Virus record (IMG/VR): IMGVR_UViG_3300027816_000051
Span: 1 to 64,000 of that record
Strand: one strand, 5' to 3'
Length of the DNA stretch: 64,000 nucleotides
The notes beneath the pieces are model-generated. The model ran no database searches. It had not been told where the DNA came from and was given only the letters and a program-made list of their open reading frames with translations. The position numbers and the translations under genes were made by a program. This document shows positions 4,365-25,497 of this stretch, in pieces (within the stretch, counting starts at the first letter, position 1; every line of letters begins with the position of its first letter).

Positions 4365-4372
4365 ATTTATAA

Positions 4373-4423: not shown

Positions 4424-4426
4424 TTG

Positions 4427-4500: not shown

Positions 4501-4501
4501 G

Positions 4502-4576: not shown

Positions 4577-4577
4577 A

Positions 4578-5006
4578 TTACTTAATTCGTTCATCCCATT
4601 CTTCTTGGGTCCCCAATCTAATTGGAACGAACAATGCAAATCCATCATCATCTTCAAAATGGTTACAATCATCCTCTCTCCAACCAAACTTATATCTCAT
4701 GTGTATAAATTTGTTTGTCTCTTGATTCCATCTTGCGATTGTGGTATTTCTATGTTCACCAATATAAATTTGACCATTTACTAAATCTTTTTTAGGAATC
4801 GCACCTGCGTCAATTAGTTTCGGAACATAGAACTCTCTCCATTCTTTTTCATCCACTCTTGGAAGAGTTGGGACATCTTCGGGATTATTAATCTTTGGTA
4901 AATTCTCCCAATGATTCCTAATCATTCTTTCCCTCTCTTCTTTTAGTTTCATTTTCTCCGCTTCAAATTTCATTTTGACGGCGTTGATGTTATCATTTCT
5001 TTCCAT
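4578..5006 (-). CDS. Hypothetical protein
   Basis: Start moved to MERNDNI (5006); upstream part of the track ORF is tRNA-Trp/Val sequence. Confidence 0.8.
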   Translation of the reverse strand: MERNDNINAVKMKFEAEKMKLKEERERMIRNHWENLPKINNPEDVPTLPRVDEKEWREFYVPKLIDAGAIPKKDLVNGQIYIGEHRNTTIARWNQETNKFIHMRYKFGWREDDCNHFEDDDGFALFVPIRLGTQEEWDERIK

Positions 5007-5028
5007 GTCGTTTATTTTTAAAAGTTTG

Positions 5029-5099
5029 CACAGGTGGAGAGATTCGAACTCCCAACAACGGTTTTGGAGACCGGTATGATACCCTTTCACTACACCTGT
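5029..5099 (-). tRNA. tRNA-Trp(CCA)
   Basis: CGGT CTCCAAA ACCG anticodon arm. Confidence 0.93.
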
Positions 5100-5107
5100 G
5101 TATTGTG

Positions 5108-5180
5108 TAGTCCCTGTCGGATTCGAACCGACGACCCTCTGCATGTAAGGCAGACGCTCTCCCAACTGAGCTAAGGAACT
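5108..5180 (-). tRNA. tRNA-Val(TAC)
   Basis: TCTGC CTTACAT GCAGA. Confidence 0.95.
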
Positions 5181-5190
5181 ATGAAAGGAA

Positions 5191-5313
5191 AGAGGAAGAT
5201 GGTTCAGTGGACATCCTCTTTTACGATTGGCGTTACTTCAGGTGAATATCTGCAAACTCCGAATACATCATCCAATATTCACTCTCGAGATATTGATGTA
5301 TCATTCCCCAATC
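5191..5313 (-). ncRNA. Candidate pseudoknot/switch RNA
   Basis: GATTGG/CCAATC closing stem; crossing TACATCA/TGATGTA and GTGAATAT/ATATTCAC stems; trailing GAGGA/TCCTC hairpin. Confidence 0.5.
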
Positions 5314-5321
5314 AACCTTTG

Positions 5322-5395
5322 TGTCCCCGATGCGACTCGAACGCATAACCCCCACATTAAAAGTGTGGTGCTCTAACCAATTGAGCTACGAAGAC
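5322..5395 (-). tRNA. tRNA-Lys(TTT)
   Basis: CCACA CTTTTAA TGTGG. Confidence 0.95.
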
Positions 5396-5400
5396 AAATG

Positions 5401-5473
5401 TGGTACCGACAGGAATTGAACCTGTGACACCCAGATTTTCAGTCTGGTGCTCTACCAACTGAGCTACGGTACC
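5401..5473 (-). tRNA. tRNA-Phe(GAA)
   Basis: CCAGA CTGAAAA TCTGG. Confidence 0.95.
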
Positions 5474-6179: not shown

Positions 6180-6677
6180 GTGATGAAGAGACTGCCCATC
6201 ATATTATTATTATTTCTAATATCATTTGGATTTTCGAATCTGAATGCCCAAACTATTGTTGTTGATACGGTAATCAATAACATTAAAATTGGTCCGTTCA
6301 CCGAAAATAAGAATTTGGCTTTCGGTGTTAAAAATATAATTGAAGAAATCATCAATGAACAGGATAGTTTAATTCTGATTACAGATAAAAATAAAGCAGA
6401 CTACAAAATTAAAGTTGAACTCATATTTTTTGACATTGTAACGACTAACTCGGGGGTTAGTATTTTTCACGAAGACAAAACAACCACCGTCATAAGAATG
6501 AAAGGTGTATTGTACAAAGGTGATAAAAAAATTAAACAGGAATTTTCGGAAGGTAAATCAACCGAAATTTCAACCTCAACCATAATGATTGATGAGGGTG
6601 GTAAATTCAATCAACAATCTGCTAGTTCGGCATTAAAGAAAACAACTCAAAACCTAATAAACAAACTAATACTATGA
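6180..6677 (+). CDS. Exported protein, probable CsgG/TolB-N-like fold
   Basis: Sec signal peptide; C-terminal G.S.....KFNQQSASSALKK parallels the CsgG-like protein at 9477. Confidence 0.6.
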   Translation: MMKRLPIILLLFLISFGFSNLNAQTIVVDTVINNIKIGPFTENKNLAFGVKNIIEEIINEQDSLILITDKNKADYKIKVELIFFDIVTTNSGVSIFHEDKTTTVIRMKGVLYKGDKKIKQEFSEGKSTEISTSTIMIDEGGKFNQQSASSALKKTTQNLINKLIL

Positions 6678-8590
6678 AAAAATTATTATTTATCCTAACC
6701 GCGTTAATTTTTACGACGACCGCGTTTTCTCAAACTACGCCACAGATTGGTAATCCTGTTGCGTATAAAACAATCAAAAGGGGTGACACCCTTGATGTTG
6801 TGTTTAAATACACACCAGCATCTTCTGTTGATGTTAGAACTTTCCAAGTTGATTTTCAATATAGAAAACAACTTTTCACTCACGTATCAACAACTGTCGA
6901 CCCAACTGTGAGTACTATGACACCAGCACTTTCGATTAAGTTCTTTAACAACTACAAATACTCAAGCTACAGTTCGGGAACTGGTTTGTACTCATATTCA
7001 ACGGATACAAATTACACTGTGGCAAGAAACTTTTTGGTTTTGTCAAGTGGTTCTCAAATCACCCAAGACACCTTTTTGATTCACAACAAATTTATCATCA
7101 ACGATGTTGAATCGAACTTCGACGCGGACAGTGTTGAAATAAACTGGGCTCGAATGTTCAAATATGACGGTACTACAATAGGTGATAACATTGCAATCTT
7201 AGATGTTCAAGACATGCATCTTGAACTTTTGGGTAACTTGGTTATCAGTGGTGTTGTTGAATTACCGCCAACAATGAAACTAAATGGTAGAAGACCAACA
7301 GTTATATGTACAAAATACAACACAGGTACATTTGTATCATCAGCACTTTGTGACACTGCGGGTTTCTACTCACTTAACAACGTAGATAAAAATACTAAGT
7401 ATAAATTACTTGTAAGATTCCCCGCGGATAGTATGGAAGTTTTCAGAGATTACGCAGTGACAATATCAGACGCGGTAAAAACATATGATGAATATACAGT
7501 AACTGATGTAAACCAAGGATTTGGTCAACAATATTTGAAAAATGGCTTGGCTTATCTAATAGGTGATATGAACCAAAACGGAAAGTTAGATGGTGGTGAC
7601 CCATACTTGATTTATGCAAACGTTAGTGGTATGAAAAAAATTGACACCACAACCATGATTAGAACATTCCACGCTGATGTTTATGATTCATTAGTGTTAG
7701 GTTCAACACAATGGAATGATTGGCCAAATCATTTAACCGCCACCAATTTTATTACTGATAGTGTTGGATTAACTAATAAGACAGTAAACATTAAGTACTT
7801 TATTCAAGGTGATGTTGACAGAACTTACTCATCGAGAGTATGGAACTCATCAGGTGTATTAGTAGCTAAGGCGGTGTTTAAAGGTAAATTAGATGTTGAG
7901 ATACCTAATACCGCATCATCAGGTAATCAACCAATATACGTACCATTTAATGTAAACACTAATGGTGATAATAATTATGGTCTACAGTTTGAAATGAAAT
8001 ATGATAAAAACAAGGTTAAATTTGAAGAAATCATATCTAATTTTAACGGAGGTCCATGGTTACAGTACGTTACACATGACGCAACTGCTGGTACAATTAG
8101 ATTTGGTGGTATGAATAACCAATTTAAAGATGGTTTAATTGGTCAAGCAACACCATTTAAATTAAAATTTTCACCTATTGGAAATAATGATATTGTGAGT
8201 AATATTTACGTTAGACAATTAATGGACGCATCCGATGAAAGAGGTGACCACTTGAATATTGACTTAGTTAGTAGTGTTGCTGTTATTATGTACAAAATGG
8301 CACCACCTATGAATCAAGACATTGATGAAATTACAGCATCAATTCGTCCAAACCCAACTGGTGGTTGGTTTGAATTAGAAGTAAAATTTCCCAACCCAAA
8401 CATGTCAATGAATGTTTCCATCTATGATAATAGAGGTCAACTAATTAAACAAGTTGGTTCTGTTACCACTAACTATATGGAAACAACTGCCTACAAACAA
8501 ATTGATATGAGTTCTGCATCATCAGGTAATTATTATCTGATTTTGAATAATTATAATAAACAATTAACAAGACAATTTATAAAAGTTTAA
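6674..8590 (+). CDS. T9SS type-A-sorted protein with cohesin-like and dockerin-like modules
   Basis: Signal peptide; GDMNQNGKLDGGDPYLI Ca-loop and later QGDVD; GLQFEMKYDKNKVKFEEI...IRFGG cohesin-like; C-terminal IRPNPT...IYDNRGQLI...GNYYLIL...QFIKV sorting domain. Confidence 0.8.
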   Translation: MKKLLFILTALIFTTTAFSQTTPQIGNPVAYKTIKRGDTLDVVFKYTPASSVDVRTFQVDFQYRKQLFTHVSTTVDPTVSTMTPALSIKFFNNYKYSSYSSGTGLYSYSTDTNYTVARNFLVLSSGSQITQDTFLIHNKFIINDVESNFDADSVEINWARMFKYDGTTIGDNIAILDVQDMHLELLGNLVISGVVELPPTMKLNGRRPTVICTKYNTGTFVSSALCDTAGFYSLNNVDKNTKYKLLVRFPADSMEVFRDYAVTISDAVKTYDEYTVTDVNQGFGQQYLKNGLAYLIGDMNQNGKLDGGDPYLIYANVSGMKKIDTTTMIRTFHADVYDSLVLGSTQWNDWPNHLTATNFITDSVGLTNKTVNIKYFIQGDVDRTYSSRVWNSSGVLVAKAVFKGKLDVEIPNTASSGNQPIYVPFNVNTNGDNNYGLQFEMKYDKNKVKFEEIISNFNGGPWLQYVTHDATAGTIRFGGMNNQFKDGLIGQATPFKLKFSPIGNNDIVSNIYVRQLMDASDERGDHLNIDLVSSVAVIMYKMAPPMNQDIDEITASIRPNPTGGWFELEVKFPNPNMSMNVSIYDNRGQLIKQVGSVTTNYMETTAYKQIDMSSASSGNYYLILNNYNKQLTRQFIKV

Positions 8591-10286: not shown

Positions 10287-12083
10287 ATGGTTATGAATTT
10301 TAAAACGTTAATATTAAGTTTTTTTCTTATTTTCGTATGTAACATATCGAAAGCACAGGTATCAACATATACCTTTATCGACCCTTGTACAAAAGAGGTA
10401 ACTATGTTTAGTGTACCAATACAGGGTGGTAAAACAATGATTATTTTTTTAGATAATGTTGGTTACTTTGATGCTAATGATTTGTCAAATGGTAATTTTT
10501 CAAATTGGGTAAATCAGGTTTACACAAAATACAGACAGACCAATCCCTGTTCACAACAACAAGGTCAGGTAATTCAAAATCAGATAACCGCACAAATAAT
10601 TGGAGGTACGATTCAGTCAGTTGTTAGTTCTATTTTGTCAAGCAGTCAATCACAATCAACAAGTTTAGAAAGTGGTTCGTCAAGTAGTGATGCTGGTGGA
10701 AAAGACAATAAAAATTCTGAAAAAAAGAAAAATAATAATTCATCCCAAACAAATGGAAATAATTCATCTCAATCAAATACAACGAGTACTACTTCAACTC
10801 AAACTGGAGGACAATCCCAAACGAATTCAGGAACTAATAACTCAAATGGAGGAAGTGGTTCAACATCAGGAAATGGGAATACAACGAATGGTGGAGGGAC
10901 ATCAGGTTCAGGTAACACAACTCAAGGTGGAAATTCAACGACTCAACCGTCTGTAGGAACAAACACGTCTACTAACAACAATTCAGGTTCAACCAATAGT
11001 GGTGGTTCTGGTGGTACTAACAATAGTTCGTCTAATAATACGAACACAACAACCGGTAACAATGGAACATCTACAAATACTTCGGGTGGTTCAACAACTA
11101 ATACAAACGGTTCGGCAACCACAAGTGGTAGTGGTGGTAGTAATACCAACAATTCAAATAGTGGAGGTTCTAATACAAACGGTTCTAATGGTAATACCAC
11201 AGGTGGTTCTACAAATGGTAATAGTGGGGGTTCTAATGGTGGTACCACTAGTGGTACAAATACAACAGGTGGAAGCGGTTCAAGTAATACTAATAACACC
11301 AACACAAATAATCAAAAGGGTGAGGAAGTTGGTGCCACAACACAAATGAATAATGATGCACACAATGATAATAATGCGGGTGGAGGTTCTAATAGTGGTG
11401 GTAAAGGTAAATCAGGGGGTAGTGGTAGTGCGAGGTCAAACCCTATAATAGTTTCTTCTGATATTACCTCAGCACAAAACTTGAATAGAACATTTACACC
11501 TATTGTTAATATAGGTACAAGTAAATCGTCAATGACGGGTTTATCAAGTTATGGTGTTACTGGTATGGTATGGTTAAACTTTAAACAGTTTGCTGTTTCG
11601 GCTAAATACACTAAAATACATTACAGTAAATCAAAAAAATTAAAATTCATACATAATTTAAATTTAACGGGTGTATATACTTACGGAAACTACTTGGGTT
11701 TTGTTGGTTATAGTGGGATTTTAAATGGTGGAAAATACGGTGTAACAGGTTTTAATATAAGTGGTGCAGCCACGATAATATCAGAAGAAAAAAGTGGTTA
11801 TTATTCACCATCAATTACCGCTTTTTATACAAGACCAATTAAGGTTAGTAAAAAAATGATAGTTAGTCCTGAATTATATGTTATTTCTACACCATTGGTT
11901 TATTCAACCAAAGACAAAGTATCAATAAGTGATAGATACGTGAGTGGGTTTATTGGGACGGGTATTGATTATCAAATATCAAAAAGATTTAAGTTAAATG
12001 TCAACTATAAAGCAAATATGAGTACAAATCCGGAATTTCCGATTTTGTCATTCTTTTTAATTGGTAGTAAGATAAATTTATGA
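10287..12083 (+). CDS. Exported protein with long S/T/N/G-rich linker and probable C-terminal beta-barrel
   Basis: Signal peptide; about 260 aa of low complexity; C-terminal alternating amphipathic strands ending GSKINL. Confidence 0.7.
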   Translation: MVMNFKTLILSFFLIFVCNISKAQVSTYTFIDPCTKEVTMFSVPIQGGKTMIIFLDNVGYFDANDLSNGNFSNWVNQVYTKYRQTNPCSQQQGQVIQNQITAQIIGGTIQSVVSSILSSSQSQSTSLESGSSSSDAGGKDNKNSEKKKNNNSSQTNGNNSSQSNTTSTTSTQTGGQSQTNSGTNNSNGGSGSTSGNGNTTNGGGTSGSGNTTQGGNSTTQPSVGTNTSTNNNSGSTNSGGSGGTNNSSSNNTNTTTGNNGTSTNTSGGSTTNTNGSATTSGSGGSNTNNSNSGGSNTNGSNGNTTGGSTNGNSGGSNGGTTSGTNTTGGSGSSNTNNTNTNNQKGEEVGATTQMNNDAHNDNNAGGGSNSGGKGKSGGSGSARSNPIIVSSDITSAQNLNRTFTPIVNIGTSKSSMTGLSSYGVTGMVWLNFKQFAVSAKYTKIHYSKSKKLKFIHNLNLTGVYTYGNYLGFVGYSGILNGGKYGVTGFNISGAATIISEEKSGYYSPSITAFYTRPIKVSKKMIVSPELYVISTPLVYSTKDKVSISDRYVSGFIGTGIDYQISKRFKLNVNYKANMSTNPEFPILSFFLIGSKINL

Positions 12084-14365
12084 GAAATGTACTATTTTTT
12101 ATATTGTTTTTGTTGTTACCTGTCTTAGCTTTTTCACAAGCAACAACAATGTCATTGGGTACAAGTAGTACGGGTGTGGTATCATCTACTTACAATACAT
12201 GGACCAAGGTTGACCCTAATTTAACAATTACAGCAAATGGGACAATAAATGGATTTAGAGTTCAAATATCTCAAACGTACACAAGTGGCGACCAATTGAG
12301 GTCAACATCAACTTTACCAACAGGTGTGAGTGCTTCTTTTAATACTACCACAGGTATATTAGTATTTTCGGGCACAGCAAGTGCAAGTGATTGGCAAACA
12401 GTATTGAGAGGTGTTGAATTTAAATCAACAACATCAACTTGTTACCCACTACAAAGGAGAGTCACATTTGTTGCTGGTTTAGTTTTTTACAACCCATTAA
12501 CTGAACATTTTTATGAATATGTTTCATCATCAGGTTCATGGACAACCGCAAAAACTAATTCTGAGTTAAGGTCTTATTTTGGTAGAGCCGGTTATTTAGC
12601 GACCATGTCTTCTGAAGCTGAAAATAATTTTATTTGGAAATTAATGTCATCAGATGGTTGGTTTGGGGCGTCGGATGAGATGAGTCAGGTTAATACCGCT
12701 AAGGGTTCTACCGTTTATACTTCACAAGCGGCGGTAGAACAAAAATGGCATTGGGTGTCAGGTCCTGAGAAGGGGACACAGTTTTCTAACGGTAGTACCG
12801 CGGTAACGGGTCAATACTCAAAATGGGCTGGTGGTGAACCAAATAATGCGGGTGGTGAACATTATGCACAATTTTATTCCGCGAACAGTGGACAATGGAA
12901 TGATTTACCTAACACTAACTTACCCGGTTATATTTGTGAATATGGAGACATGCCAAACGACCAAACATCAAGTATCACAATATTAACAAGGAATGTTGAA
13001 ATCAGTAACGCTTCAAGTGGTTACATAAGTGGTGGTAACATAAATGTTTGTTCGGGTAGTAACAGCACAACTTTAACGTTAAATGGGTATACAGGTAGTA
13101 TTGTTAGATGGGAATCTTCTTTTGATAACTTTTTTACCGCAGCAACCACAATATCGAGTACATCTTCAAGTATAACAGTAACCAACTTAACTAAAACCAC
13201 ATACTACAGAGCGGTAATAAATTCAACAAGTCCTGTGAGTTGTACAGGTTTAGTAACATCAAGTGTTTATCTGTCTGTAAAACCAACAAAATCAGGTTCA
13301 GTATTTGCGGTAAATAATAGTATATGTGCGGGAGGGCAATCCGAATTAACATTATCTGGTCAACAAGGTAATGTAAATAAATGGCAACGCTCAACTAATG
13401 GAACAACATGGACCGATATATCAAATACAACCACAAGTCTTACCGAAACAATTAGTAGCGCCGGAACTTATTATTATAGGGTAGAAGTTCAAACTCCAAA
13501 TTGTGGTAGTGCGGTCTTTTCTGATTCTAAAATAATCACAGTTACATCGGGAACACCTCCTGTTGGTGGTTCTATATCTTCATCAACACATACTTCTACA
13601 ACAAACTCAGGAACACTTACACTAAGTAGTTACACGGGTACAATTGTTAAATGGCAACGTTCAACAAATGATGGTGTAACATGGACTGACATTGTAAACA
13701 CATCGACAACTTATTCATACACAAATATAACCGTCAAAACATTGTTCAGAGCTCAATTACAAAGTGGTACTTGTGGTTTCGCTTATAGTTCATCAGGTTC
13801 TGTAACGATTATAACTGAAACAATAATCGGTACAATTACGATACCTACAGGTTTATCGGTAAGACCACAAGTAAAATTATATTTGGTTGAAAATGGTGTT
13901 GAGACACTGTTACAAACTGTCACGGTTGGTACAACAGGTACTTACACTTTAAACCCAACAAAATATAACTCAACTTATAAAATAGTTCCTTCGTTTTCAT
14001 CATCATTAACGTCCGCAGATTTTGATAATGTTTTTAATGAGTCACAAAACGAAAATACACCGAGTTTATTACAACCCGGTGTAGTATTGAATAATGGCCC
14101 GAAAATGAAAGCTGGCGATATTAATAAAGATGGTAAGGTAACAATATCGGATGCGTACTTATTAGGTGCTAATTTAACAAGTATGATAACATTTGATGAG
14201 GTTTATTGGTACACCGCGAATGATTTTAATTCGTTAACAATATCAAACTTCAATACAGTCACTCCATCAAATAATTTCTCAATAAATTTTACAAATACAT
14301 CAGTTACTTTTAACATCAAGTATATTGTAAAAGGAGATGCTAACTTATCTTCTTCGTCTTATTGA
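12080..14365 (+). CDS. C-type lectin / Ig-like repeat / dockerin-like adhesin
   Basis: Signal peptide; GYLAT..SEAENNFI..W.G.SD..W.W..G..Y.KWAGGEPNN..E....WND..YICEY C-type lectin; three ICxG..LTLxG..G....WQ repeats; GDINKDGKVTISDAYLL...KGDAN dockerin-like end. Confidence 0.85.
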   Translation: MRNVLFFILFLLLPVLAFSQATTMSLGTSSTGVVSSTYNTWTKVDPNLTITANGTINGFRVQISQTYTSGDQLRSTSTLPTGVSASFNTTTGILVFSGTASASDWQTVLRGVEFKSTTSTCYPLQRRVTFVAGLVFYNPLTEHFYEYVSSSGSWTTAKTNSELRSYFGRAGYLATMSSEAENNFIWKLMSSDGWFGASDEMSQVNTAKGSTVYTSQAAVEQKWHWVSGPEKGTQFSNGSTAVTGQYSKWAGGEPNNAGGEHYAQFYSANSGQWNDLPNTNLPGYICEYGDMPNDQTSSITILTRNVEISNASSGYISGGNINVCSGSNSTTLTLNGYTGSIVRWESSFDNFFTAATTISSTSSSITVTNLTKTTYYRAVINSTSPVSCTGLVTSSVYLSVKPTKSGSVFAVNNSICAGGQSELTLSGQQGNVNKWQRSTNGTTWTDISNTTTSLTETISSAGTYYYRVEVQTPNCGSAVFSDSKIITVTSGTPPVGGSISSSTHTSTTNSGTLTLSSYTGTIVKWQRSTNDGVTWTDIVNTSTTYSYTNITVKTLFRAQLQSGTCGFAYSSSGSVTIITETIIGTITIPTGLSVRPQVKLYLVENGVETLLQTVTVGTTGTYTLNPTKYNSTYKIVPSFSSSLTSADFDNVFNESQNENTPSLLQPGVVLNNGPKMKAGDINKDGKVTISDAYLLGANLTSMITFDEVYWYTANDFNSLTISNFNTVTPSNNFSINFTNTSVTFNIKYIVKGDANLSSSSY

Positions 14366-14703
14366 ATTTGAATTATTTTATTGTAAGTGTCGGTAATCTC
14401 ACCACATGTTTCATAATCTTCATTGGTTTCAAAGAAAGGTAAGATATCTCTAACTAATACTATTGATTCTTGTCTCTTAAATTTTAATTCGGTCTCCCAC
14501 TGTAAACCATTTATCTTAGCGCCCAAGACTAAAGTTACATTGTTTTTATCTTTTCTTTTGAGACTTTTAAATAGATTCGCTAAGGTGCGATAAATAAGTT
14601 CTTTATTGACGTTGTAAAAATCACCAAAACTTTTATAGTCTTGTTTTAGTATTAACTTCTTGATTACGGTGTCATTTGGTTTTTTAGGTAGTTTTGTTGA
14701 CAT
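14359..14703 (-). CDS. Hypothetical protein
   Basis: Clean ORF with an upstream near-consensus host promoter (TTTG-N20-CATATTTG). Confidence 0.7.
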   Translation of the reverse strand: MSTKLPKKPNDTVIKKLILKQDYKSFGDFYNVNKELIYRTLANLFKSLKRKDKNNVTLVLGAKINGLQWETELKFKRQESIVLVRDILPFFETNEDYETCGEITDTYNKIIQIQ

Positions 14704-14786
14704 TGTCGATTTAATTATTGGTTCATCACAAATATGAACAATAAAGTCGACATAAACAAACTTTACCCCAAATTGTTTAAAGTATT

Positions 14787-15197
14787 TTATACAGTATGTT
14801 CAATCTGAACCCGTACACAATTTTGTGGTAATCTATGGATGTGTCTGTAATTGTTGATGTAACCCATCATATTGGCACTACCAATCGCGTTAGCTGAATG
14901 TATAACAACATCAACAACTGGTTTACCATCCAACCATTGTTCCACTAACCACTTGGTACAATCCATACCTGTTTTTTCTTTGATGTTGTTGTAGTCTAAT
15001 TCGTAATTATGATAAACATTACGATGCCATTCAGCCATTGCGGTATCACCTAAATCATGGTCAAGAGAAATTAAACTAATATTCTCCAATCCAATTTCTG
15101 ATACTTTCTCAACAAACTCCTCATATGTTCGAACAATGACCCATTCGTCCTTTAGTACTGGTGTTCTAACGTCATCTAAATAAATTCTTTTTTTCAT
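14787..15197 (-). CDS. Cyclic-phosphate-processing receiver-domain protein
   Basis: IYLDDVRTP, ISLDHDLG, TGMDCTKWL and IHSANAIG motifs; adjacent to RNA ligase and kinase. Confidence 0.8.
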   Translation of the reverse strand: MKKRIYLDDVRTPVLKDEWVIVRTYEEFVEKVSEIGLENISLISLDHDLGDTAMAEWHRNVYHNYELDYNNIKEKTGMDCTKWLVEQWLDGKPVVDVVIHSANAIGSANMMGYINNYRHIHRLPQNCVRVQIEHTV

Positions 15198-15213
15198 TGT
15201 ATGATTTTTCTTA

Positions 15214-16299
15214 CTAATTCTCTTCATCTTTTTTAAATGGTTTTGAATATGGTGGATATAATATTTTCCATATTATATTTTTATATGATTTACCATCCAA
15301 CATATTAAACAGTATTGAAGGGTGGGAATATCTTTTAGCTAATTCAGCAAACTCCGCTCGGGTAAATTCTTTTTGGTATGATTCAAAATAAACGTTACGA
15401 ATTTTGTTGAATATCCATTTATATTCCTTTTCGATATTTTCAAATCGAATCACAAAGTCCTTTACCGTTTCTTTCACCCAACTATTAAATTCATCTGGTA
15501 CCTTCTCAAGTAACTCATCAAATGGTTTATCTTCTTTAAGATATTCCCAAATATCTCTACTTGACACATTAGTTAGTATTCTATGTAAACGAACATACTC
15601 TTCGAATTTTATTTTCATTCTAAAGTTCGATGGGTAGAAACGAATAACAAACCCTTCACTATTTGGGGTGTTTAGTTTTTTATAGTTGTCAAATGTTTCC
15701 TTGTTGAAGGTTACCATAGTGCTATCGACAATATCTTTCTCTTCAATATCCGATGAATGAAAAATTGCTCGAGCGGTGTGCCAGTTTAATTCTCCTATGG
15801 GTGTTGTTACAGATAAAAAGGTAATCTTATCACAACCATAGTTCACTACTATCCTATTTTCGGGATAAATAATTTCACATAAATAGGTAACTTCCTTCAT
15901 GAATTTACTTAAATCATATTTTGATTTAAGAATTTCTAAACCACGAATGGATTGTTCCGAGGTAAAAGAACCTCTTGTTGACATAATCCATTCACCATCA
16001 TAAAAGAAAAGGATTCCAAGAGAACCATCCATTTTATCTTGGATGTGAGTATACTCACTATCCCAAGGAATTAAATTTTTATCAATAACCTCTTCGTAGT
16101 TGAAAAATTTACCAAATGGTTTTGATATTACTTCTCCTGAATGGGTTGTAATAAGACCACGACATTGCATAGTAATATCATCCCACAAAGATTCATATTG
16201 TACTCTTGGTGTGTAATTCCATATGTACAAATCTTTGGTTGGGTGAGTTTGTTTCATTAACAAACCATCCTTATGATATCTCTCTAAAACTTCAATCAC
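15214..16299 (-). CDS. rnlA: T4 Rnl1-like RNA ligase
   Basis: QCRGLI, KPFGKFFNYEE, motif I DKMDGSLG, TYLCEII, EGFVIRF, MKIKFEEY. Confidence 0.92.
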   Translation of the reverse strand: MIEVLERYHKDGLLMKQTHPTKDLYIWNYTPRVQYESLWDDITMQCRGLITTHSGEVISKPFGKFFNYEEVIDKNLIPWDSEYTHIQDKMDGSLGILFFYDGEWIMSTRGSFTSEQSIRGLEILKSKYDLSKFMKEVTYLCEIIYPENRIVVNYGCDKITFLSVTTPIGELNWHTARAIFHSSDIEEKDIVDSTMVTFNKETFDNYKKLNTPNSEGFVIRFYPSNFRMKIKFEEYVRLHRILTNVSSRDIWEYLKEDKPFDELLEKVPDEFNSWVKETVKDFVIRFENIEKEYKWIFNKIRNVYFESYQKEFTRAEFAELAKRYSHPSILFNMLDGKSYKNIIWKILYPPYSKPFKKDEEN

Positions 16300-16709
16300 A
16301 ACTTAATTTCAAAACGATTTTTCATAATCTCTAATTTGTCTTCAGGAACTCCATGTATGTTCTCACCACCGTGTCTGTTTTCAACCACAATAGTGTGAAC
16401 TCTGTAACCATATCTTTTAGCCATTTCAAAATATGGCTCCATTTCCCATTCTTGTGTAAAAGTGTTTGAAACAACAACCCTAACAACACTATTCATCATT
16501 AAATTGGCACATCTTTGTTGACAATCATTATGTGCTTCCCTTAATTTTGTTGGGTCGAAATTATAATTACCCTCTTTATCTGTAAAGTAATCGTCCGCAG
16601 ACAATGGTTTCAACGGGTTATTTGGAGTGTATAAAATTATCTCCCCTAAAGTAGATTTACCCGAACCAGGTAACCCTCTCACTAAAATCAAATCTTTTGT
16701 ATATTCCAT
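16296..16709 (-). CDS. Stand-alone polynucleotide kinase (P-loop, AAA_33-like)
   Basis: LVRGLPGSGKST Walker A; SADDYF; VSNTFTQEWE; HGVP; no HAD phosphatase domain. Confidence 0.85.
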   Translation of the reverse strand: MEYTKDLILVRGLPGSGKSTLGEIILYTPNNPLKPLSADDYFTDKEGNYNFDPTKLREAHNDCQQRCANLMMNSVVRVVVSNTFTQEWEMEPYFEMAKRYGYRVHTIVVENRHGGENIHGVPEDKLEIMKNRFEIKL

Positions 16710-16727
16710 GATAAATTAGATTTATCA

Positions 16728-16759
16728 CAAATATACGTATTAATTTTTAGAATACCAAA
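16728..16759 (-). promoter_or_regulatory. Bacteroidota sigma70-type promoter of the RNA-repair operon
   Basis: TTTG-N20-TATATTTG. Confidence 0.8.
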
Positions 16760-16763: not shown

Positions 16764-16792
16764 ATAAAAACCCCCAACGGTGAGTCGGGGGT
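16764..16792 (-). terminator. Intrinsic terminator downstream of the clp gene
   Basis: CCCCC...GGGGG hairpin followed by T-rich tract. Confidence 0.7.
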
Positions 16793-16901
16793 TTGCGGTC
16801 ATTTTGTGGATTCAACACCACGGACTATAAAACGAGAGGAAATCGGCAAAGATATCCTGTGTGAATATAAATATATATGTTTTTTTAAAAAGTCTGAATA
16901 T

Positions 16902-18920
16902 TTACCCCTTTTTTTTAAAAATTTTTATTTCTCCGTCTTTAATTTTCAAATTAATTGTTTCGTTTTCTTTGATTTCACCTCTTAAAATTGAATCACTTAA
17001 ATAATCTTCACACATATTTTGGATAATTCTTTTAATAGGTCTCGCACCAAAATCTTCTTGTGTATTCAATTCAGATATCCTTTCTACAATTGTTTTATCA
17101 AAAGAAACTTTAAAATTCTTTTCTTTAAGTCGGATTACTAATTTATTCAATTCAATCTCAATAATCTTTTTAATCACATCTTTATCTAAAGAATTAAAAC
17201 TGATTATATCATCTACTCGATTTAAAAACTCAGGATTAAAATGTTGTTTGAGTGATTTTTGAACAATTGACTTTTTGACTTCATAGTTTTGAGACGTTGA
17301 TGACGACGAACTAAACCCAACACCCTTACCGAATTCGGATACTTTTTTAGCACCGATGTTAGATGTCATAATCACAATAGTGTTGGTAAAATTCACTTTT
17401 CTTCCAAAAGAATCTGTCAAGTGCCCCTCATCCAATATTTGAAGTAGAATGTTGAACACATCTTTATGTGCTTTTTCAACCTCATCAAATAGAACTACTG
17501 AGAATGGATTATTTTTGATTTTTTCAGTGAGTTGTCCACCTTCATCATAACCAACATATCCTGGAGGTGACCCGATTAATTTAGCAACATTGTGTTTTTC
17601 CATGTACTCACTCATGTCAACACGAATTACTTTTTCAGCATCCCCAAAAAGTAGTTCGGCGATACTTTTAGCGAGATACGTTTTACCAACACCTGTTGAA
17701 CCTAAGAAAATAAAAGAACCGATTGGTTTATTGGTATCTTTGATACCAACTCTATTTCTTCTAATGGCTTTAGAGATGATTGATATTGCCTCGTCCTGTC
17801 CAATCACTTTAGATTTTAATTTTTCTTCTAAATTTAATAGATTTGTTGTTTCTCTGTCATCAATTTTAGAAAGAGGTACTCCAGTTATTTGTGATATTAT
17901 CTCGTAAACATCAGCAATTGTTACTGGTGTTTTATTGTCTTTTTGTTTATCTAACCATTTCTTTTTCTCTTCATCTAACTTACTTAATAACTTTCTTTCT
18001 TCATCACGTAACTTAGCTGCCTGTTCGTAGTTTTGACTTTTAACGACTTGTATTTTTTTATCCTTCAAATCATCAGATTCCTTTTTAAGTTTTTCAATAA
18101 TTTCGGGAATCTTTGTGTTGATTTTTTTATCAGAACCTAATTCGTCCATTACGTCAATCGCCTTATCGGGGAACTGACGGTCCGTGATAAATCTAGATGA
18201 GAGACTAACAATAGTTTCAAAAACTTCCGGTTCGTAAAAAACTTTATGGAAGTTTTGATAAGAATCTCTTAGGTTATTTAGAATTTGTACGGTTTCTTCT
18301 TTAGTTGGTTCTTTAAGGATTATCTTTTGGAATCTACGAACCAACGCACCATCTTTTTCGATATGTTTTTTAAATTCGTCAAATGTTGTTGCACCAATAC
18401 ATTGAATTTCACCCCTTGCTAAAGCGGGTTTCATAATATTAGCAGCATCCATTGAACCACTAGCATTACCCGCTCCAACCATAGTGTGAATCTCATCTAT
18501 GAATACAATTACGTTTGGTTCGTTCTGTAATTCATTTAGAATAGCTTTAATCCTTTCTTCAAACTGTCCTCTATATTTCGTGCCAGCAACTAAGGATGTT
18601 AAATCTAACGAGACTATTCTCTTATCTAAAAGATTTGATGGACAATCTCCCTTGACAATCATTTGTGCTAATTTTTCAACCAACGCTGATTTACCAACAC
18701 CCGCATCACCAACTATTACTACGTTGTTTTTCTTTTTTCGAGATAATATCTGTGCAATTCTCTTGACCTCACTATCTCGACCTATAACGGGGTCTACTTT
18801 ACCCTCTTCAACCATTTTATTCAAATCTCTTGAAAAGTTATCAAGGATAGGGGTGGTTGAACCCTTCCTTGTTTTCTTTGGGTTGGTTGTGTTTCCTTCT
18901 TCGAAAAAATCTACTGACAT
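16902..18920 (-). CDS. clpC: ClpC/ClpA-type Hsp100 AAA+ ATPase lacking the N-terminal Clp-repeat domain
   Basis: LDNFSRDL, DPVIGRD, GDAGVGKS, RGQFEER, UVR-like QNYEQAAKLRDEE, GSTGVGKT, GSPPGYVGY, FGARPI. Confidence 0.9.
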   Translation of the reverse strand: MSVDFFEEGNTTNPKKTRKGSTTPILDNFSRDLNKMVEEGKVDPVIGRDSEVKRIAQILSRKKKNNVVIVGDAGVGKSALVEKLAQMIVKGDCPSNLLDKRIVSLDLTSLVAGTKYRGQFEERIKAILNELQNEPNVIVFIDEIHTMVGAGNASGSMDAANIMKPALARGEIQCIGATTFDEFKKHIEKDGALVRRFQKIILKEPTKEETVQILNNLRDSYQNFHKVFYEPEVFETIVSLSSRFITDRQFPDKAIDVMDELGSDKKINTKIPEIIEKLKKESDDLKDKKIQVVKSQNYEQAAKLRDEERKLLSKLDEEKKKWLDKQKDNKTPVTIADVYEIISQITGVPLSKIDDRETTNLLNLEEKLKSKVIGQDEAISIISKAIRRNRVGIKDTNKPIGSFIFLGSTGVGKTYLAKSIAELLFGDAEKVIRVDMSEYMEKHNVAKLIGSPPGYVGYDEGGQLTEKIKNNPFSVVLFDEVEKAHKDVFNILLQILDEGHLTDSFGRKVNFTNTIVIMTSNIGAKKVSEFGKGVGFSSSSSTSQNYEVKKSIVQKSLKQHFNPEFLNRVDDIISFNSLDKDVIKKIIEIELNKLVIRLKEKNFKVSFDKTIVERISELNTQEDFGARPIKRIIQNMCEDYLSDSILRGEIKENETINLKIKDGEIKIFKKKG

Positions 18921-19091: not shown

Positions 19092-19337
19092 ATGTCAATT
19101 ATTTTAGAAAAAACAGAAGGTAACATTACAGAGGTTGTGGTTTCATCATCAAATCTGAATCGAGCGATTTATAATTCCTCTGAAAACCATTTATCGATTG
19201 AATTTAATAATGGCTCTATTTATGAGTATGAAAATGTGCCGCTAGAGATTTTTGAAAATTTTAAAAAATCGGAATCTCAAGGTAAATTTTTTAATTCGAA
19301 TATATCGAGAACGTACAAATATAAAAAAATCAAATGA
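19092..19337 (+). CDS. KTSC-domain protein
   Basis: SSNL...Y....L.IEFNNGSIYEYENVP...F.....S.GKFFN..I. Confidence 0.9.
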   Translation: MSIILEKTEGNITEVVVSSSNLNRAIYNSSENHLSIEFNNGSIYEYENVPLEIFENFKKSESQGKFFNSNISRTYKYKKIK

Positions 19338-20122
19338 GTGTAATTGATGAAATAATTGAAGATATGGAAAAGGACCAAGAGATTGTAAAGTCTTTTGTTC
19401 CAAAAGAGACATTACCAAAAAATATCTTTGATATTAATAATGGTAAATCTATTTTAAATTCTGAAGTCAGAAAAAAAATGTTAGAAATAACAGAAGAATT
19501 TATTGACTTTGTTGGAGTTAATTTTTTCATTTACGATATTATTTTTATTGGTTCATTAGCAAACTATAATTGGTCTGAATATTCAGACGTTGATATTCAC
19601 ATATTAATCGATTATGACGAATTTGATGAGTCCGAAAACAAAGACTTGGTCGTTTATCATCAAATTGTGCAAGAGTTTTTTGATGTCAAAAGAAGATTGT
19701 GGAATGAAACCACAGACATTAAAATAAAAGGATACGAGGTCGAAATGTACGTTCAAGACGTAGATGACAAATATGTTGCTACGGGTGTTTATTCAATTTT
19801 AAATAACGAATGGATTGTTGAACCTAAAAAAATTGAGTCGGCTTTCGATATAGATGAGAAGAAAATTTTAGAAAAGTCTGAAGAATATGCGAAAGAGGTA
19901 GAACGTTTAGAAGACTTAAACAACAAAGGTCAAGACGTTTCAAAAGAAATAAAAACCCTAAAAGATAAACTTAAAAAATTCAGACAGTCGGGATTAGAAA
20001 AAGGAGGTGAGTATTCTTATGAAAATTTAACCTTCAAATTATTAAGAAGAAATGGGTTTATCGAAAAACTTTTTAATATCAAAAGTTCAATACGAAATAA
20101 AAAATTGTCCTTACCGCAATAG
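19334..20122 (+). CDS. Pol-beta superfamily nucleotidyltransferase
   Basis: IGSLANYNWSEYSDVDIHIL (hGS..DxD) and YEVEMYVQD. Confidence 0.85.
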   Translation: MSVIDEIIEDMEKDQEIVKSFVPKETLPKNIFDINNGKSILNSEVRKKMLEITEEFIDFVGVNFFIYDIIFIGSLANYNWSEYSDVDIHILIDYDEFDESENKDLVVYHQIVQEFFDVKRRLWNETTDIKIKGYEVEMYVQDVDDKYVATGVYSILNNEWIVEPKKIESAFDIDEKKILEKSEEYAKEVERLEDLNNKGQDVSKEIKTLKDKLKKFRQSGLEKGGEYSYENLTFKLLRRNGFIEKLFNIKSSIRNKKLSLPQ

Positions 20123-23721: not shown

Positions 23722-25497
23722 ATGAGTAATCAAAAAATAGAACAATTAAAAGAGTATGCCCGTATTTTAAAAGATACACCATATGCTTTAAGAACATATC
23801 TACAGACTTACGATAACACTCAGAAAAGATACGTCCCGTTAGAACTTTTTCCTGACCAAATTCAATTGTTAAAAGACTACGAATCGTACAATGAAAATAT
23901 CACAAGAAAGTATAGACAGGCAGGTGTAACAACTGTTACCGCGGCTTGGATTTCTAAAAAGTTACAATTAGCAAAACCTGAAAATCCTGAAAGGGTTCTT
24001 GTTATTGCGAACAAAAAAGATACTGCGGTAGAAATGGCTAATAAGATTAGAAATTTCTTAGACCAATGGCCTGATTGGATTAATGTTGGGTTTTCACCCG
24101 ATAAAAACTCAGAAAGTAGATTTAGATTAAACAATGGATGTGAGGTAAAAGCTGTAGCAACTTCTGCGGATGCGTTACGTGGTTATACACCAACTATACT
24201 TGTATTTGACGAAGCTGCGTACATTGAAGCCGGTGAAGACTTTTGGGCTGCATCTATGGCGTCTCTATCTACGGGTGGTAAGATTATTCTTATTTCGACA
24301 CCAAACGGTTTTGACCCAATTTATTACGGTGTTTACGACCAAGCGATTAGAGGTGTAAACGATTTTCATATTACCGATTTAAGATGGTTTAAAGACCCGA
24401 GATACACAAAAGATTTAAGATGGGTTAAGTGTAGTGATATAGTCCATTACATGTTGAATAGAGAGCAATACGATGATGACGAAGTTGTAATGACCGACTT
24501 TGAAATTCAAAACTATAAACAATACGAAGAAGAAGGTTATAAACCTTTATCTTCTTGGTTTGAATCAATGTCAAAAAAATTCAAATTTGATAGAAGAAAA
24601 ATTGCACAGGAATTAGAGTGTGACTTTCTTGGTTCAGGTGATGGTGTAATTCCTTCAGATGTTCAAGACAATATTGTAAAAAATATGTTGAGAGACCCTA
24701 AGGAAAAATACATGCAAGGAACATTTTGGCAATGGAAAGAACCAATTCAAGGACACAAATACATAATGGGTGTTGATGTTTCTCGTGGGGATAGTGAAGA
24801 CTTTTCATCAATAAACATAATTGACTTTGATGAGAGGGAACAAGTGGCTGAATACATTGGTAAAATACCACCTGACGATTTGGCGTCCGTCGCATACAAA
24901 TGGGGTGTTCTTTATGAAGCATTTATTGTTGTTGATATCACTGGTGGAATGGGTGTTGCAACATCAAGAAAACTACAAGAATTGAACTACAAAAATCTCT
25001 ATATTGATGGTATCAACACAAAGAATATTTGGGAATATAATTCCAAAGCGATGGAGAAAATCCCCGGTATTAATTTCAATAATAAGAGGACTCAAATCGT
25101 TGCGGCATTTGAAGAACAATTAAGAAAAGGATTTCAGGTTAGGTCCGCAAGGTTAATGAATGAATTAAACACATTTGTTTACATCAATGGTAGACCAGAC
25201 CACATGAAAGGAGCTCACGATGATGCTATCATGAGTATGTCTATGGCTCTATATGTTGGGGACATTTCTTTCTCTCAACTAAGTAAAAATGAAAACGCAA
25301 ATAAAGCGATGTTAGAATCGTGGACAATATCTGAAAGGACGTATGAACCAAATAAATCTTTTTATTCATATGGTACCGCATTTGACCAAATAGGTTCAAT
25401 GTCTATGGATAATGACCCAAATGTCCCAAGACACAACAACAATGCAACAAAAGAACAATACGCACAGTATTCTTGGTTATTTGGTAAAAAAAGATAA
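23722..25497 (+). CDS. terL: Terminase large subunit (T4 gp17-like)
   Basis: KYRQAGVTT, LVFDEAAYI, LISTPNG, QELECDFLGSG, GVDVSRG..D.S, HDDAIMS. Confidence 0.95.
   Translation: MSNQKIEQLKEYARILKDTPYALRTYLQTYDNTQKRYVPLELFPDQIQLLKDYESYNENITRKYRQAGVTTVTAAWISKKLQLAKPENPERVLVIANKKDTAVEMANKIRNFLDQWPDWINVGFSPDKNSESRFRLNNGCEVKAVATSADALRGYTPTILVFDEAAYIEAGEDFWAASMASLSTGGKIILISTPNGFDPIYYGVYDQAIRGVNDFHITDLRWFKDPRYTKDLRWVKCSDIVHYMLNREQYDDDEVVMTDFEIQNYKQYEEEGYKPLSSWFESMSKKFKFDRRKIAQELECDFLGSGDGVIPSDVQDNIVKNMLRDPKEKYMQGTFWQWKEPIQGHKYIMGVDVSRGDSEDFSSINIIDFDEREQVAEYIGKIPPDDLASVAYKWGVLYEAFIVVDITGGMGVATSRKLQELNYKNLYIDGINTKNIWEYNSKAMEKIPGINFNNKRTQIVAAFEEQLRKGFQVRSARLMNELNTFVYINGRPDHMKGAHDDAIMSMSMALYVGDISFSQLSKNENANKAMLESWTISERTYEPNKSFYSYGTAFDQIGSMSMDNDPNVPRHNNNATKEQYAQYSWLFGKKR

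What the first reader, a model, noticed from the sequence alone, without database searches (positions are those of the whole stretch)
14787..16759. Three-gene RNA end-healing/sealing operon with a receiver domain replacing the Pnkp phosphatase
Seen: host-type promoter, then kinase-only Pnk, Rnl1 ligase and a receiver-fold protein (LDD..., LDHDLG, HSAN). Known: T4 uses bifunctional Pnkp plus Rnl1; cyclic-phosphate-processing receiver domains were predicted bioinformatically in RNA-repair contexts. To my knowledge their activity is little tested, so this compact operon is a clean test case.
Basis: partly seen in the sequence, partly recalled or inferred. Interest (0 to 1): 0.6.

Follow-up and report, generated by a model that had tools for sequence, protein, structure and literature searches.

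The report
Phage RNA-repair operon with cREC domain
A 288-kb phage of aquatic Bacteroidota carries a tight three-gene unit (a 5'-kinase, a T4-type RNA ligase and a receiver-like "cREC" protein) that most likely mends cut tRNA. This gene combination has already been described by computation, and the phage carries other candidate RNA-end phosphatases elsewhere in its genome.

Summary
Three overlapping minus-strand genes at 16709-14787 encode:
- a 137-aa kinase-only P-loop protein, closest solved relative T4 Pnk;
- a 361-aa Rnl1-type RNA ligase with intact catalytic motifs;
- a 146-aa PF20274 cREC protein. Its AlphaFold model matches receiver domains (Z up to 10.6), and it keeps the acidic pocket (D18 D19, D56-H57-D58, S111).

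A terminator and a conserved Bacteroidota-type promoter precede the unit.

- cREC is a single-copy, highly conserved gene (78-100% identity in the 80 related phage loci kept). The kinase-ligase pair sits anywhere from adjacent to about 55 kb away.
- The pair is missing from the same locus in two contigs and from the complete Flavobacterium phage immuto.
- The window's own genome also encodes a stand-alone HAD_SAK_2 RNA-repair phosphatase and calcineurin-like phosphoesterases. These same families flank cREC in relatives. So cREC is not shown to replace the phosphatase.
- The ligase + cREC + kinase neighbourhood was published by Iyer, Aravind and colleagues (2021, 2022).

cREC activity still appears untested.

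Verdict: a new, compact member of a known predicted system, useful as a biochemical test case but not surprising.

The parts
16768..16794 (-). Intrinsic-terminator-like hairpin (11-bp stem, 6 GC pairs, then a T run). It ends the upstream ClpB-like gene transcript.
   Evidence: the hairpin is conserved in L020, L027, L036 and L069
16728..16758 (-). Bacteroidota-type promoter-like element TTG-N20-TATATTTG (-33 and -7 boxes), 18 nt upstream of the kinase ATG.
   Evidence: both boxes are conserved while the spacer varies in related contigs. Function is inferred, not shown.
16296..16709 (-). Kinase-only P-loop polynucleotide 5'-kinase candidate, 137 aa. It has a Walker A motif GLPGSGKST and an invariant D39 in SADDYF. 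It has no phosphatase domain.
   Evidence: PF13671 2.9e-13, phrog_2071 and phrog_505. A profile of 12 homologues finds T4 Pnk (1ly1/1ltq) as the best solved match at E 6.6e-5, with the D-D-Y motif aligned to T4 R-D-D-Y.
15214..16299 (-). Rnl1-type ATP-dependent RNA ligase, 361 aa. Motif I is K89-M-D91-G92, motif IV is E215-G216, motif V is K229-I-K231. The GTG start overlaps the kinase stop codon.
   Evidence: PF09511 8.5e-15, phrog_562 4e-61, TIGR02308 below its cut-off. T4 Rnl1 2c5u at 5e-8, with the motifs aligned. The motif residues are invariant in 14 homologues.
14787..15227 (-). cREC (cyclic-phosphate-processing receiver-like) protein, 146 aa, or 136 aa if it starts at M11 (15197). Invariant residues are D18 D19 R21 P23 R33 Y35 F38 S54 D56 H57 D58 L59 G87 K92 H110 N113 G116 N119.
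   Evidence: PF20274 1.4e-22. Alignment A1 includes homologues at 38-44% identity. AlphaFold2 gave pLDDT 74.6 and pTM 0.73. The top 50 structural matches are nearly all receiver domains, Z 9-10.6.
14725..14735 (-). Second copy of the 11-mer ATATTTGTGAT (a -7-like box), 21 nt before ORF114. It marks a probable separate promoter and so the 3' limit of the three-gene unit.
   Evidence: The 11-mer occurs 3 times in 288 kb, and 2 of them are here and at 16724. The ATATTTG core is conserved upstream of ORF114 homologues.
14359..14703 (-). ORF114, a neighbour of unknown function. It belongs to the local syntenic backbone (ClpB ... cREC-ORF114), not to the repair module.
   Evidence: No Pfam, PHROG or NCBIfam hit. 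It follows cREC in 17-18 syntenic loci, including L050/L051, which lack the kinase and ligase.

Best explanation
This is a phage RNA (most likely tRNA) break-repair unit, transcribed from its own Bacteroidota-type promoter.

Proposed steps:
- The 137-aa kinase phosphorylates the 5'-OH end left by a metal-independent host ribonuclease.
- The Rnl1-type ligase seals a 3'-OH to a 5'-phosphate through its lysyl-AMP (K89).
- The cREC protein is the 3'-end healing component. It is a receiver-fold phosphoesterase in which D56, at the end of strand 3, is proposed to attack the 2',3'-cyclic (or 3') phosphate. D58 would act as acid/base and D18/D19 would hold a metal, as in receiver and HAD acyl-phosphate chemistry.

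cREC is not a private part of this operon. It is a single-copy, strongly conserved gene of a large group of aquatic Bacteroidota phages, and a mobile kinase-ligase pair lies next to it in this lineage.

Complete removal of the phosphate may be done by cREC alone. It may instead be shared with the phage's HAD_SAK_2 and calcineurin-like phosphoesterases, which are encoded 165-185 kb away.

Shown here: gene identities, catalytic motifs, the fold, synteny and co-occurrence. Inferred: every enzymatic activity, the substrate, and the promoter's function.
For: Identities and motifs.

Operon structure: overlapping ORFs, the terminator and a promoter with a phylogenetic footprint.

Fold: the AlphaFold model matches receiver domains at Z 9-10.6, rmsd about 2.1-2.5 A over about 90-95 residues. 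D18/D19 fall at the end of strand 1, D56 at the end of strand 3 and S111 at the end of strand 4. These are the positions of the receiver acidic pocket and its Thr/Ser.

Guilt by association with several independent RNA-repair families:
- In 80 related loci, 67 have at least one repair gene within 6 kb of cREC. The families seen are Rnl1, an Rnl2-like PF09414+PHA02142 ligase, the same kinase, two Metallophos families and HAD_SAK_2. A CCA-adding enzyme also sits beside cREC in 7 loci.
- At genome level, all 5 records that are at least 90% complete have cREC, the kinase and a ligase.

Positional analogue: Aeromonas phage 2L372X has kinase-Rnl1-Metallophos_2 in the same gene order and has no cREC.

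Context: 23 phage tRNA genes lie at 573-5473, which fits a conflict over tRNA.

Motif parallel: the cREC strand-3 motif SLDHDLG matches motif I (FLDHDGV) of the phage's own HAD_SAK_2.

The published prediction points the same way (PMC7824862, PMC9503650).
Against: - No biochemical data exist for any cREC (PMC9503650).
- cREC persists at 81% identity in the complete phage immuto, which has no Rnl1, Rnl2-like ligase, RtcB or this kinase.
- cREC is also present in L050/L051, where the kinase-ligase pair is absent from the same locus.
- In many genomes cREC lies 16-55 kb from the kinase and ligase.
- Other phosphoesterases in the genome could do the healing.
- The conserved receiver Lys at the end of strand 5 has no invariant counterpart, and one distant homologue ends before strand 5.
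- The model is only of moderate confidence (pLDDT 74.6), and Foldseek alone found nothing with E below 0.001.
Confidence: 0.55

Rival explanations
1. One reading: cREC alone performs both steps, opening the 2',3'-cyclic phosphate and removing the resulting phosphate. It would thereby fully replace the HAD phosphatase domain of T4 Pnkp, and the three proteins would be sufficient for repair.
For: - The operon has no phosphatase domain on the kinase, and the genome has no PNK3P or 2H family member.
- cREC occupies the slot that a Metallophos phosphoesterase fills in Aeromonas phage 2L372X.
- It carries a DxD-like D56-H57-D58 motif, as HAD motif I does.
- The genome has no KptA or sirtuin that could remove a junction 2'-phosphate.
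Against: - The genome keeps HAD_SAK_2 and two to three calcineurin-like phosphoesterases. These are the same families that accompany cREC in relatives' repair islands. This suggests a division of labour rather than replacement.
- The Aravind group predicts ring opening only (PMC9503650).
Confidence: 0.2
2. cREC does not act on RNA ends. It degrades a small cyclic-phosphate or ADP-ribose-derived molecule (a 2',3'-cNMP, ADP-ribose 1''-2'' cyclic phosphate, or a host immune signal). Its adjacency to the kinase and ligase would then reflect clustering of counter-defence genes.
For: - cREC is conserved without any ligase or kinase in the complete phage immuto and in L050/L051.
- In Erwinia, Serratia, Xanthomonas and Yersinia jumbo phages the cREC match lies inside genes annotated as Nudix hydrolase. 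PMC9503650 reports these as fusions.
- Its distance from the repair genes is highly variable.
Against: - 67 of 80 loci have an RNA-repair gene within 6 kb, and these genes come from several unrelated families.
- This genome has no KptA or sirtuin that would generate ADP-ribose cyclic phosphate.
- Its single Nudix gene is far from cREC, at 198 kb.
- Here cREC is translationally close-coupled to the ligase.
Confidence: 0.17
3. cREC is not an enzyme. It would be a phospho-acceptor, a regulatory module or an RNA-end-binding module that modulates repair or another process.
For: It has the receiver fold and acidic pocket. No activity has ever been shown for the family.
Against: - No histidine-kinase partner is reported for the family (PMC7824862).
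- No output domain is present.
- Many additional invariant polar residues (R21, R33, H57, D58, K92, H110, N113, N119) are typical of a substrate-binding active site.
- PF00072 Response_reg does not match at E 0.1.
Confidence: 0.08

Closest known systems
Phage T4 tRNA repair pathway (Pnkp + Rnl1, which counters the PrrC anticodon nuclease)
   Same: - A P-loop 5'-kinase with an Asp about 20 residues after the Walker Lys. T4 Pnk is the best solved match.
- An Rnl1-type ligase with KxDG, EG and KxK motifs aligned to T4 Rnl1.
- The phage also carries its own tRNA genes.
   Different: - The kinase has no fused HAD 3'-phosphatase.
- The ligase is only distantly related: it falls below the TIGR02308 equivalog cut-off, and the T4 alignment stops at residue 248.
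- The third gene is a receiver-fold protein.
cREC-containing predicted RNA-repair neighbourhoods (Iyer, Aravind and colleagues: PMC7824862, 2021; PMC9503650, 2022), for example Escherichia phage V5 and Proteus phage Mydo
   Same: A T4-like ligase, cREC and a nucleotide kinase are linked. cREC is predicted to resolve 2',3'-cyclic phosphates, and it is common in large phages.
   Different: - Those systems are built around a sirtuin, with MazG and sometimes a calcineurin-like enzyme.
- This genome has no sirtuin or KptA and presents a minimal three-gene operon.
- It is in a Bacteroidota phage.
Kinase-Rnl1-Metallophos operon of Aeromonas phage 2L372X (NC_048770)
   Same: It has the same small kinase (about 75% DNA identity over a 108-bp stretch) and the same gene order kinase-ligase-X.
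   Different: There X is a calcineurin-like phosphoesterase (PF12850, below its cut-off) and the genome has no cREC. Here X is cREC, and the Metallophos genes lie elsewhere in the genome.
CheY-like receiver domains of two-component systems
   Same: It has the same fold (Z up to 10.6). The acidic residues sit at the ends of strands 1 and 3 and a Ser/Thr at the end of strand 4.
   Different: - There is no sequence match to PF00072.
- Helix 1 is replaced by a loop carrying invariant R21 and P23.
- There is a 25-residue insertion after strand 3.
- No invariant strand-5 Lys is present, and extra invariant His, Asn and Lys residues are.
- No kinase partner is reported for the family (from the literature, not tested here).
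HAD-superfamily RNA 3'-phosphatases (the T4 Pnkp C-terminal domain; HAD_SAK_2, PF18143)
   Same: They use the Asp-nucleophile chemistry proposed here. The local motif hhh-D-x-D is shared: cREC has SLDHDLG, and the phage's own HAD_SAK_2 has FLDHDGV.
   Different: The motif sits on strand 3 of a receiver scaffold, not on strand 1 of a HAD fold. No homology was detected, so the resemblance may be convergent or accidental.

Membership tests
Rnl1 RNA ligase (PF09511 / T4 RnlA) | Pfam family score above the gathering cut-off | tested here: met
   55.6 bits against a cut-off of 28.3
Rnl1 RNA ligase (PF09511 / T4 RnlA) | Nucleotidyltransferase motifs I (KxDG), IV (EG) and V (KxK) | tested here: met
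   K89/D91/G92, E215/G216 and K229/K231 are invariant in 14 homologues and align to the T4 Rnl1 motifs in 2c5u
Rnl1 RNA ligase (PF09511 / T4 RnlA) | Equivalog of T4 RnlA (TIGR02308 cut-off), including the C-terminal tRNA-specificity domain | tested here: not met
   55.8 bits against a cut-off of 242. The alignment to 2c5u ends at residue 248. It is a family member, not an ortholog.
T4 Pnk-type polynucleotide 5'-kinase | Walker A P-loop plus a downstream catalytic Asp | tested here: met
   GLPGSGKST and an invariant D39. The D-D-Y motif aligns to T4 R-D-D-Y.
T4 Pnk-type polynucleotide 5'-kinase | Closest solved relatives are polynucleotide kinases | tested here: met
   The profile finds 1ly1/1ltq at E 6.6e-5 and Pnkp1 4xrp at 2e-3. 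The match is weak, and the single sequence found nothing at 0.01.
T4 Pnk-type polynucleotide 5'-kinase | Acts on polynucleotide 5'-OH ends rather than free nucleotides | not testable with these tools
   Needs an enzyme assay
Bifunctional Pnkp (kinase fused to a 3'-phosphatase) | A phosphatase domain on the same polypeptide | tested here: not met
   The protein is 137 aa with only AAA_33. Homologues are 133-152 aa. There is no PNK3P in the genome.
cREC (PF20274) | Pfam family score above the gathering cut-off | tested here: met
   80.6 bits against a cut-off of 27; 79.4 bits in the genome scan, single copy
cREC (PF20274) | Receiver-like fold with conserved Asp residues at the ends of strands 1 and 3 | tested here: met
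   In the AF2 model D18/D19 follow strand 13-17 and D56 ends strand 50-56. These residues are invariant down to 38% identity. The top structural matches are nearly all receiver domains.
cREC (PF20274) | Found in RNA-repair or NAD/ADPr contexts, never with histidine kinases | tested here: met
   67 of 80 loci have RNA-repair genes within 6 kb. No histidine kinase was seen among the annotated neighbours. Neighbours were annotated only for the larger clusters.
cREC (PF20274) | Cyclic-phosphate phosphoesterase activity | not testable with these tools
   A prediction only. The literature states it is uncharacterized (PMC9503650).
Canonical two-component receiver (PF00072) | Sequence match to Response_reg, and the conserved Lys at the end of strand 5 | tested here: not met
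   There is no PF00072 hit at E 0.1. No invariant Lys lies near strand 5, and one homologue ends before it.
Single transcription unit (operon) | Same strand, overlapping or abutting ORFs, a promoter upstream and no internal terminator | tested here: inconclusive
   The ORFs overlap by 4 and 14 nt, and a terminator and promoter lie upstream.

The most novel reading that the evidence does not exclude
cREC is a genuine new enzyme class: a receiver-domain scaffold that has acquired a HAD-like D-x-D catalytic centre. It would work as an RNA 2',3'-cyclic phosphodiesterase and/or 3'-phosphatase. It would serve as a shared, single-copy 3'-end healing module of a very large clade of aquatic Bacteroidota phages. 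That module would feed several alternative repair routes (Rnl1, an Rnl2-like ligase, CCA re-addition), which would explain why it is more conserved than any of its partners.
Probability: 0.4. Interest if true: 0.6.

Novelty: new member of a known kind. Interest (0 to 1): 0.4.

Why it matters
tRNA-cutting nucleases are a widespread bacterial defence, and phage repair of the cut is the classic counter-move (T4 Pnkp and Rnl1). cREC is a widespread family: 4,517 protein clusters matched at E 0.001 or better, and PMC9503650 reports it in up to 18% of jumbo phages. Yet no member has a demonstrated activity. This operon offers three small, separately encoded proteins that could be reconstituted in vitro to settle three questions:
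- whether a receiver fold can be a nucleic-acid phosphoesterase;
- which phosphate isomer it leaves;
- whether the ligase needs a further phosphatase.

The comparative data here add a caution for such work. cREC is not tied to one ligase or kinase, and the phage has other candidate healing enzymes.

Tried and rejected
- The sigma-70 promoter scan was no better than shuffled sequence (16 sites against 16.3 expected), so it was not used as evidence.
- A sequence search of the PDB with a cREC profile gave 0 hits at E 10.
- Foldseek against the PDB found nothing with E below 0.001, although most of the weak hits were receiver domains. The exhaustive VIA-align search gave the clear result.
- The kinase as a single sequence found nothing in the PDB at E 0.01. 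Only the profile reached T4 Pnk.
Those rows were dropped and sent to no further tool; the PDB profile search, sent in the same batch, had already used them. The model therefore rests on a shallow alignment (79-91% identity), which probably explains the moderate pLDDT.
- The genome search 'relatives' is not available for a virus record.
- The idea that the two Metallophos genes near cREC in phage immuto match the two own-genome genes in the order I first paired them was wrong. The phrog_547 protein instead resembles immuto gene 34; this comes from reading the aligned fragments, not from a direct comparison.
- Complex prediction was not run, because no constant partner of cREC emerged and I do not claim binding.
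- The large representative protein search was not used, because family scans had already placed all three proteins.
Full report
**What the window is.**
- The window is the first 64 kb of a 288,260-bp IMG/VR virus record, estimated 92% complete. GC content is about 32%.
- It carries 23 tRNA genes at 573-5473 and a large terminase at 23722-25497.
- A protein at 6674-8590 has a type IX secretion sorting domain.
- The closest cultured relative is Flavobacterium phage vB_FspM_immuto.
- It is therefore a jumbo phage of aquatic Bacteroidota.

**Observation check.**
- The ligase GTG overlaps the kinase TGA (GTGA). The first cREC ATG overlaps the ligase end by 14 nt.
- Most homologues start at the equivalent of M11 (15197), 17 nt after the ligase stop.
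- Family scans give AAA_33 and PHROG 'polynucleotide kinase' for the first gene, RNA_lig_T4_1 and phrog_562 for the second, and PF20274 cREC_REC at 1.4e-22 for the third. NCBIfam shows the ligase is not an equivalog of T4 RnlA.

**Transcription signals.**
- A strong terminator-like hairpin (16794-16768) follows the upstream ClpB-like gene.
- Immediately downstream is TTG-N20-TATATTTG (16758-16728), 18 nt before the kinase ATG. To my knowledge this matches the published -33/-7 consensus of Bacteroidota promoters, TTG ... TAnnTTTG. It does not match sigma-70, for which the scan was at chance level.
- In four related contigs the hairpin, the TTGG box and the TATATTTG box are conserved while the spacer between the boxes varies. 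That is the pattern expected of a working promoter.
- A second copy of the 11-mer ATATTTGTGAT lies 21 nt before the next gene, ORF114. The 11-mer occurs only three times in the genome, and its ATATTTG core is conserved upstream of ORF114 homologues. The three genes therefore form the unit, and ORF114 probably has its own promoter.
- I could not obtain transcript data.

**Catalytic equipment of the kinase and ligase.**
- The ligase keeps K89-x-D91-G92, E215-G216 and K229-x-K231. These are invariant across 14 homologues down to 41% identity and align to the corresponding motifs of T4 Rnl1 (2c5u).
- The kinase keeps the Walker A motif and an invariant Asp (D39), among other invariant residues.
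- A profile of the kinase finds T4 polynucleotide kinase as the best solved relative (E 6.6e-5). Its D-D-Y aligns on T4's R-D-D-Y. Capnocytophaga Pnkp1 follows at 2e-3.
- The kinase is kinase-only, at 133-152 aa throughout the group.

**The cREC protein.**
- The alignment includes homologues at 38-44% identity from Stenotrophomonas, Aeromonas and Rhizobium phages. It leaves D18 D19 R21 P23 R33 Y35 F38 S54 D56 H57 D58 L59 G87 K92 H110 N113 G116 N119 invariant.
- The AlphaFold2 model has moderate confidence (pLDDT 74.6, pTM 0.73, from a shallow alignment). It gives strands at 13-17, 30-32, 50-56, 106-111 and 140-144, with helices between them.
- An exhaustive structural comparison returned receiver domains in nearly all of its top 50 rows. 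Z was 9-10.6 and rmsd about 2.1-2.5 A over about 90-95 residues. Foldseek alone was not significant, and no solved structure matches by sequence.
- D18/D19, D56 and S111 fall at the ends of strands 1, 3 and 4. These are the positions of the receiver acidic pocket and its Thr/Ser.
- The strand-5 Lys has no invariant counterpart, and PF00072 does not match.
- The extra invariant polar residues around the pocket argue for a substrate-binding active site rather than a switch.
- The strand-3 motif SLDHDLG has the same LDHD core as motif I (FLDHDGV) of the phage's own HAD_SAK_2 phosphatase. Receiver and HAD enzymes both work through an aspartyl-phosphate (established knowledge).
- I infer that D56 is the nucleophile and D58 the acid/base.

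**Comparative context. This is where the interpretation changes.**

*Locus level.* cREC relatives are very abundant: 4,517 clusters matched at E 0.001 or better, and the best 120 are all at least 77% identical. I fetched 80 viral contigs with cREC at 78-100% identity and clustered their neighbours.
- 16-18 loci repeat the window's array, ClpB-like, kinase, Rnl1, cREC, ORF114. Within them cREC stays at 84-100% identity while the ligase ranges from 55 to 100% and the kinase from 60 to 100%.
- Two contigs (L050/L051) have the same backbone without the kinase and ligase.
- In other loci cREC sits beside different neighbours: a phrog_547 Metallophos, a phrog_1649 Metallophos, a HAD_SAK_2 phosphatase, an Rnl2-like ligase (PF09414 with the PHA02142 OB domain), a 41%-identical Rnl1, or a CCA-adding enzyme.
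- In all, 67 of 80 loci have a repair gene within 6 kb, 41 have a ligase and 50 have another phosphoesterase.

*Genome level.* I searched 29 records, the larger contigs plus immuto and the window's own genome.
- cREC is single-copy in all 29. The same small kinase is in 20 and a ligase is in 22.
- In most records that have both, the kinase lies within a few kb of a ligase; G004 and G007 are exceptions at about 30-40 kb.
- All five records at least 90% complete have all three genes.
- The distance from cREC to the kinase-ligase pair ranges from 0 to about 55 kb.
- The complete genome of phage immuto has cREC (81% identical, flanked by two Metallophos genes and near tRNA genes). It has no Rnl1, Rnl2-like ligase, RtcB or this kinase.

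**The window's own genome.**
- It lacks PNK3P, 2H, Rnl2, KptA, sirtuin and RtcB.
- It does encode HAD_SAK_2 (180,495-181,067), the phrog_547 Metallophos (184,557-185,228; 62% identical to the one that flanks cREC elsewhere), a further Metallophos (199,698-200,393), an SbcD-like protein and one Nudix.
- The genes that flank cREC in relatives are thus present here in a separate region at about 179-191 kb.

**Reading.**
- The kinase-ligase pair is a small cassette that pairs with either ligase family.
- cREC is an independent, strongly conserved gene that keeps company with RNA 3'-end and tRNA repair functions in general.
- In this lineage the two are fused into one promoter-driven unit.
- The Aeromonas phage 2L372X operon, kinase-Rnl1-Metallophos_2 with no cREC in the genome, shows that the third slot is a phosphoesterase slot. 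This supports a healing role for cREC.
- The presence of HAD_SAK_2 and Metallophos enzymes in the same genome means that 'replacement of the Pnkp phosphatase' is not established.
- The persistence of cREC without any ligase keeps a non-RNA-end substrate possible. The published Nudix fusions (PMC9503650) point the same way.

**Comparison with what is known.**
- Iyer, Aravind and colleagues defined cREC and described its operonic links to RNA ligases. They listed a neighbourhood of a T4-like ligase, cREC, a nucleotide kinase, a sirtuin and MazG (PMC7824862, PMC9503650). They state that the domain is experimentally uncharacterized.
- I found no later experimental paper in the held library.
- The present case is a minimal version, without a sirtuin, in a Bacteroidota jumbo phage. 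It is a new member of a known predicted kind.

**Verdict.**
- Interest is moderate (0.4). It is a clean in vitro test set for an untested enzyme family, but it is neither a surprise nor a self-sufficient 'phosphatase replacement'.

Noticed in passing
window 573-5473 (-): A block of 23 tRNA genes covering most amino acids, including three tRNA-Met and an Ile-tat, lies 9 kb from the repair operon.
   Followed up: no
genome G000:C1 about 179,000-191,700 (outside the window; L099): This is a second region holding orthologues of the genes that flank cREC in related phages. They are a phrog_624 protein, HAD_SAK_2, the phrog_547 Metallophos, a c40 protein and a glucosaminidase. It looks as if cREC, or this block, moved within the genome.
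   Followed up: partly
L011-L090, ligase gene upstream of cREC: In syntenic loci the Rnl1 ligase varies from 55 to 100% identity while its neighbours stay much closer. In L036, for example, the kinase is 90%, the ligase 55%, cREC 84% and ClpB 95% identical. The C-terminal third of the ligase comes in two distinct versions. This suggests allele replacement by recombination or diversifying selection.
   Followed up: partly
L050, L051 (IMGVR_UViG_3300020222_001274 and 3300020198_000006): These contigs have the same ClpB ... cREC-ORF114 backbone but lack the kinase and ligase. It is a clean two-gene presence/absence polymorphism.
   Followed up: partly
window 16902-18920 (-): A 672-aa ClpB/ClpA-like double AAA+ protein (AAA_2, AAA_lid_9, ClpB_D2-small; phrog_4871) lies directly upstream of the operon and is conserved at 80-100% identity in the 18 loci that share the window's backbone.
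   Followed up: no
window 19092-20122 (+): A KTSC-domain protein (81 aa) overlaps the start of a 262-aa protein that has a weak nucleotidyltransferase match (PF01909 at 1.3e-3, phrog_36119). The pair is conserved in 18-20 of the related loci.
   Followed up: no
window 6674-8590 (+): A phage-encoded 638-aa protein carries a type IX secretion C-terminal sorting domain (Por_Secre_tail, 3.2e-8). The 761-aa protein at 12080-14365 has a signal-peptide-like N-terminus and Ser/Thr-rich repeats but no family match.
   Followed up: no
L059:4695-5435 and similar (cluster c41); L094 (Aeromonas phage P19): A CCA-adding-type nucleotidyltransferase (PolyA_pol head domain) lies 1-2 kb upstream of cREC in 7 related loci. 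A 'putative tRNA nucleotidyltransferase' lies 2 kb upstream of cREC in Aeromonas phage P19. This hints that cREC may also prepare tRNA 3' ends for CCA re-addition. The window's genome has no such gene.
   Followed up: partly
window 14359-14703 (-): ORF114 has no family match in Pfam, PHROGs or NCBIfam. Its stop overlaps the end of the convergent 761-aa gene by 7 nt. It is conserved (48-100%) only in the ClpB-backbone loci.
   Followed up: partly
L098 (Rhizobium phage LG08, PP429226 3702-3977): The cREC reading frame begins directly after a stop codon, with no ATG before the conserved FLDD strand. The record annotates only a shorter CDS starting about 100 nt further in, and an HNH endonuclease gene lies about 1 kb upstream. 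The cause could be an unusual start codon, a sequencing error or a disrupted gene.
   Followed up: no
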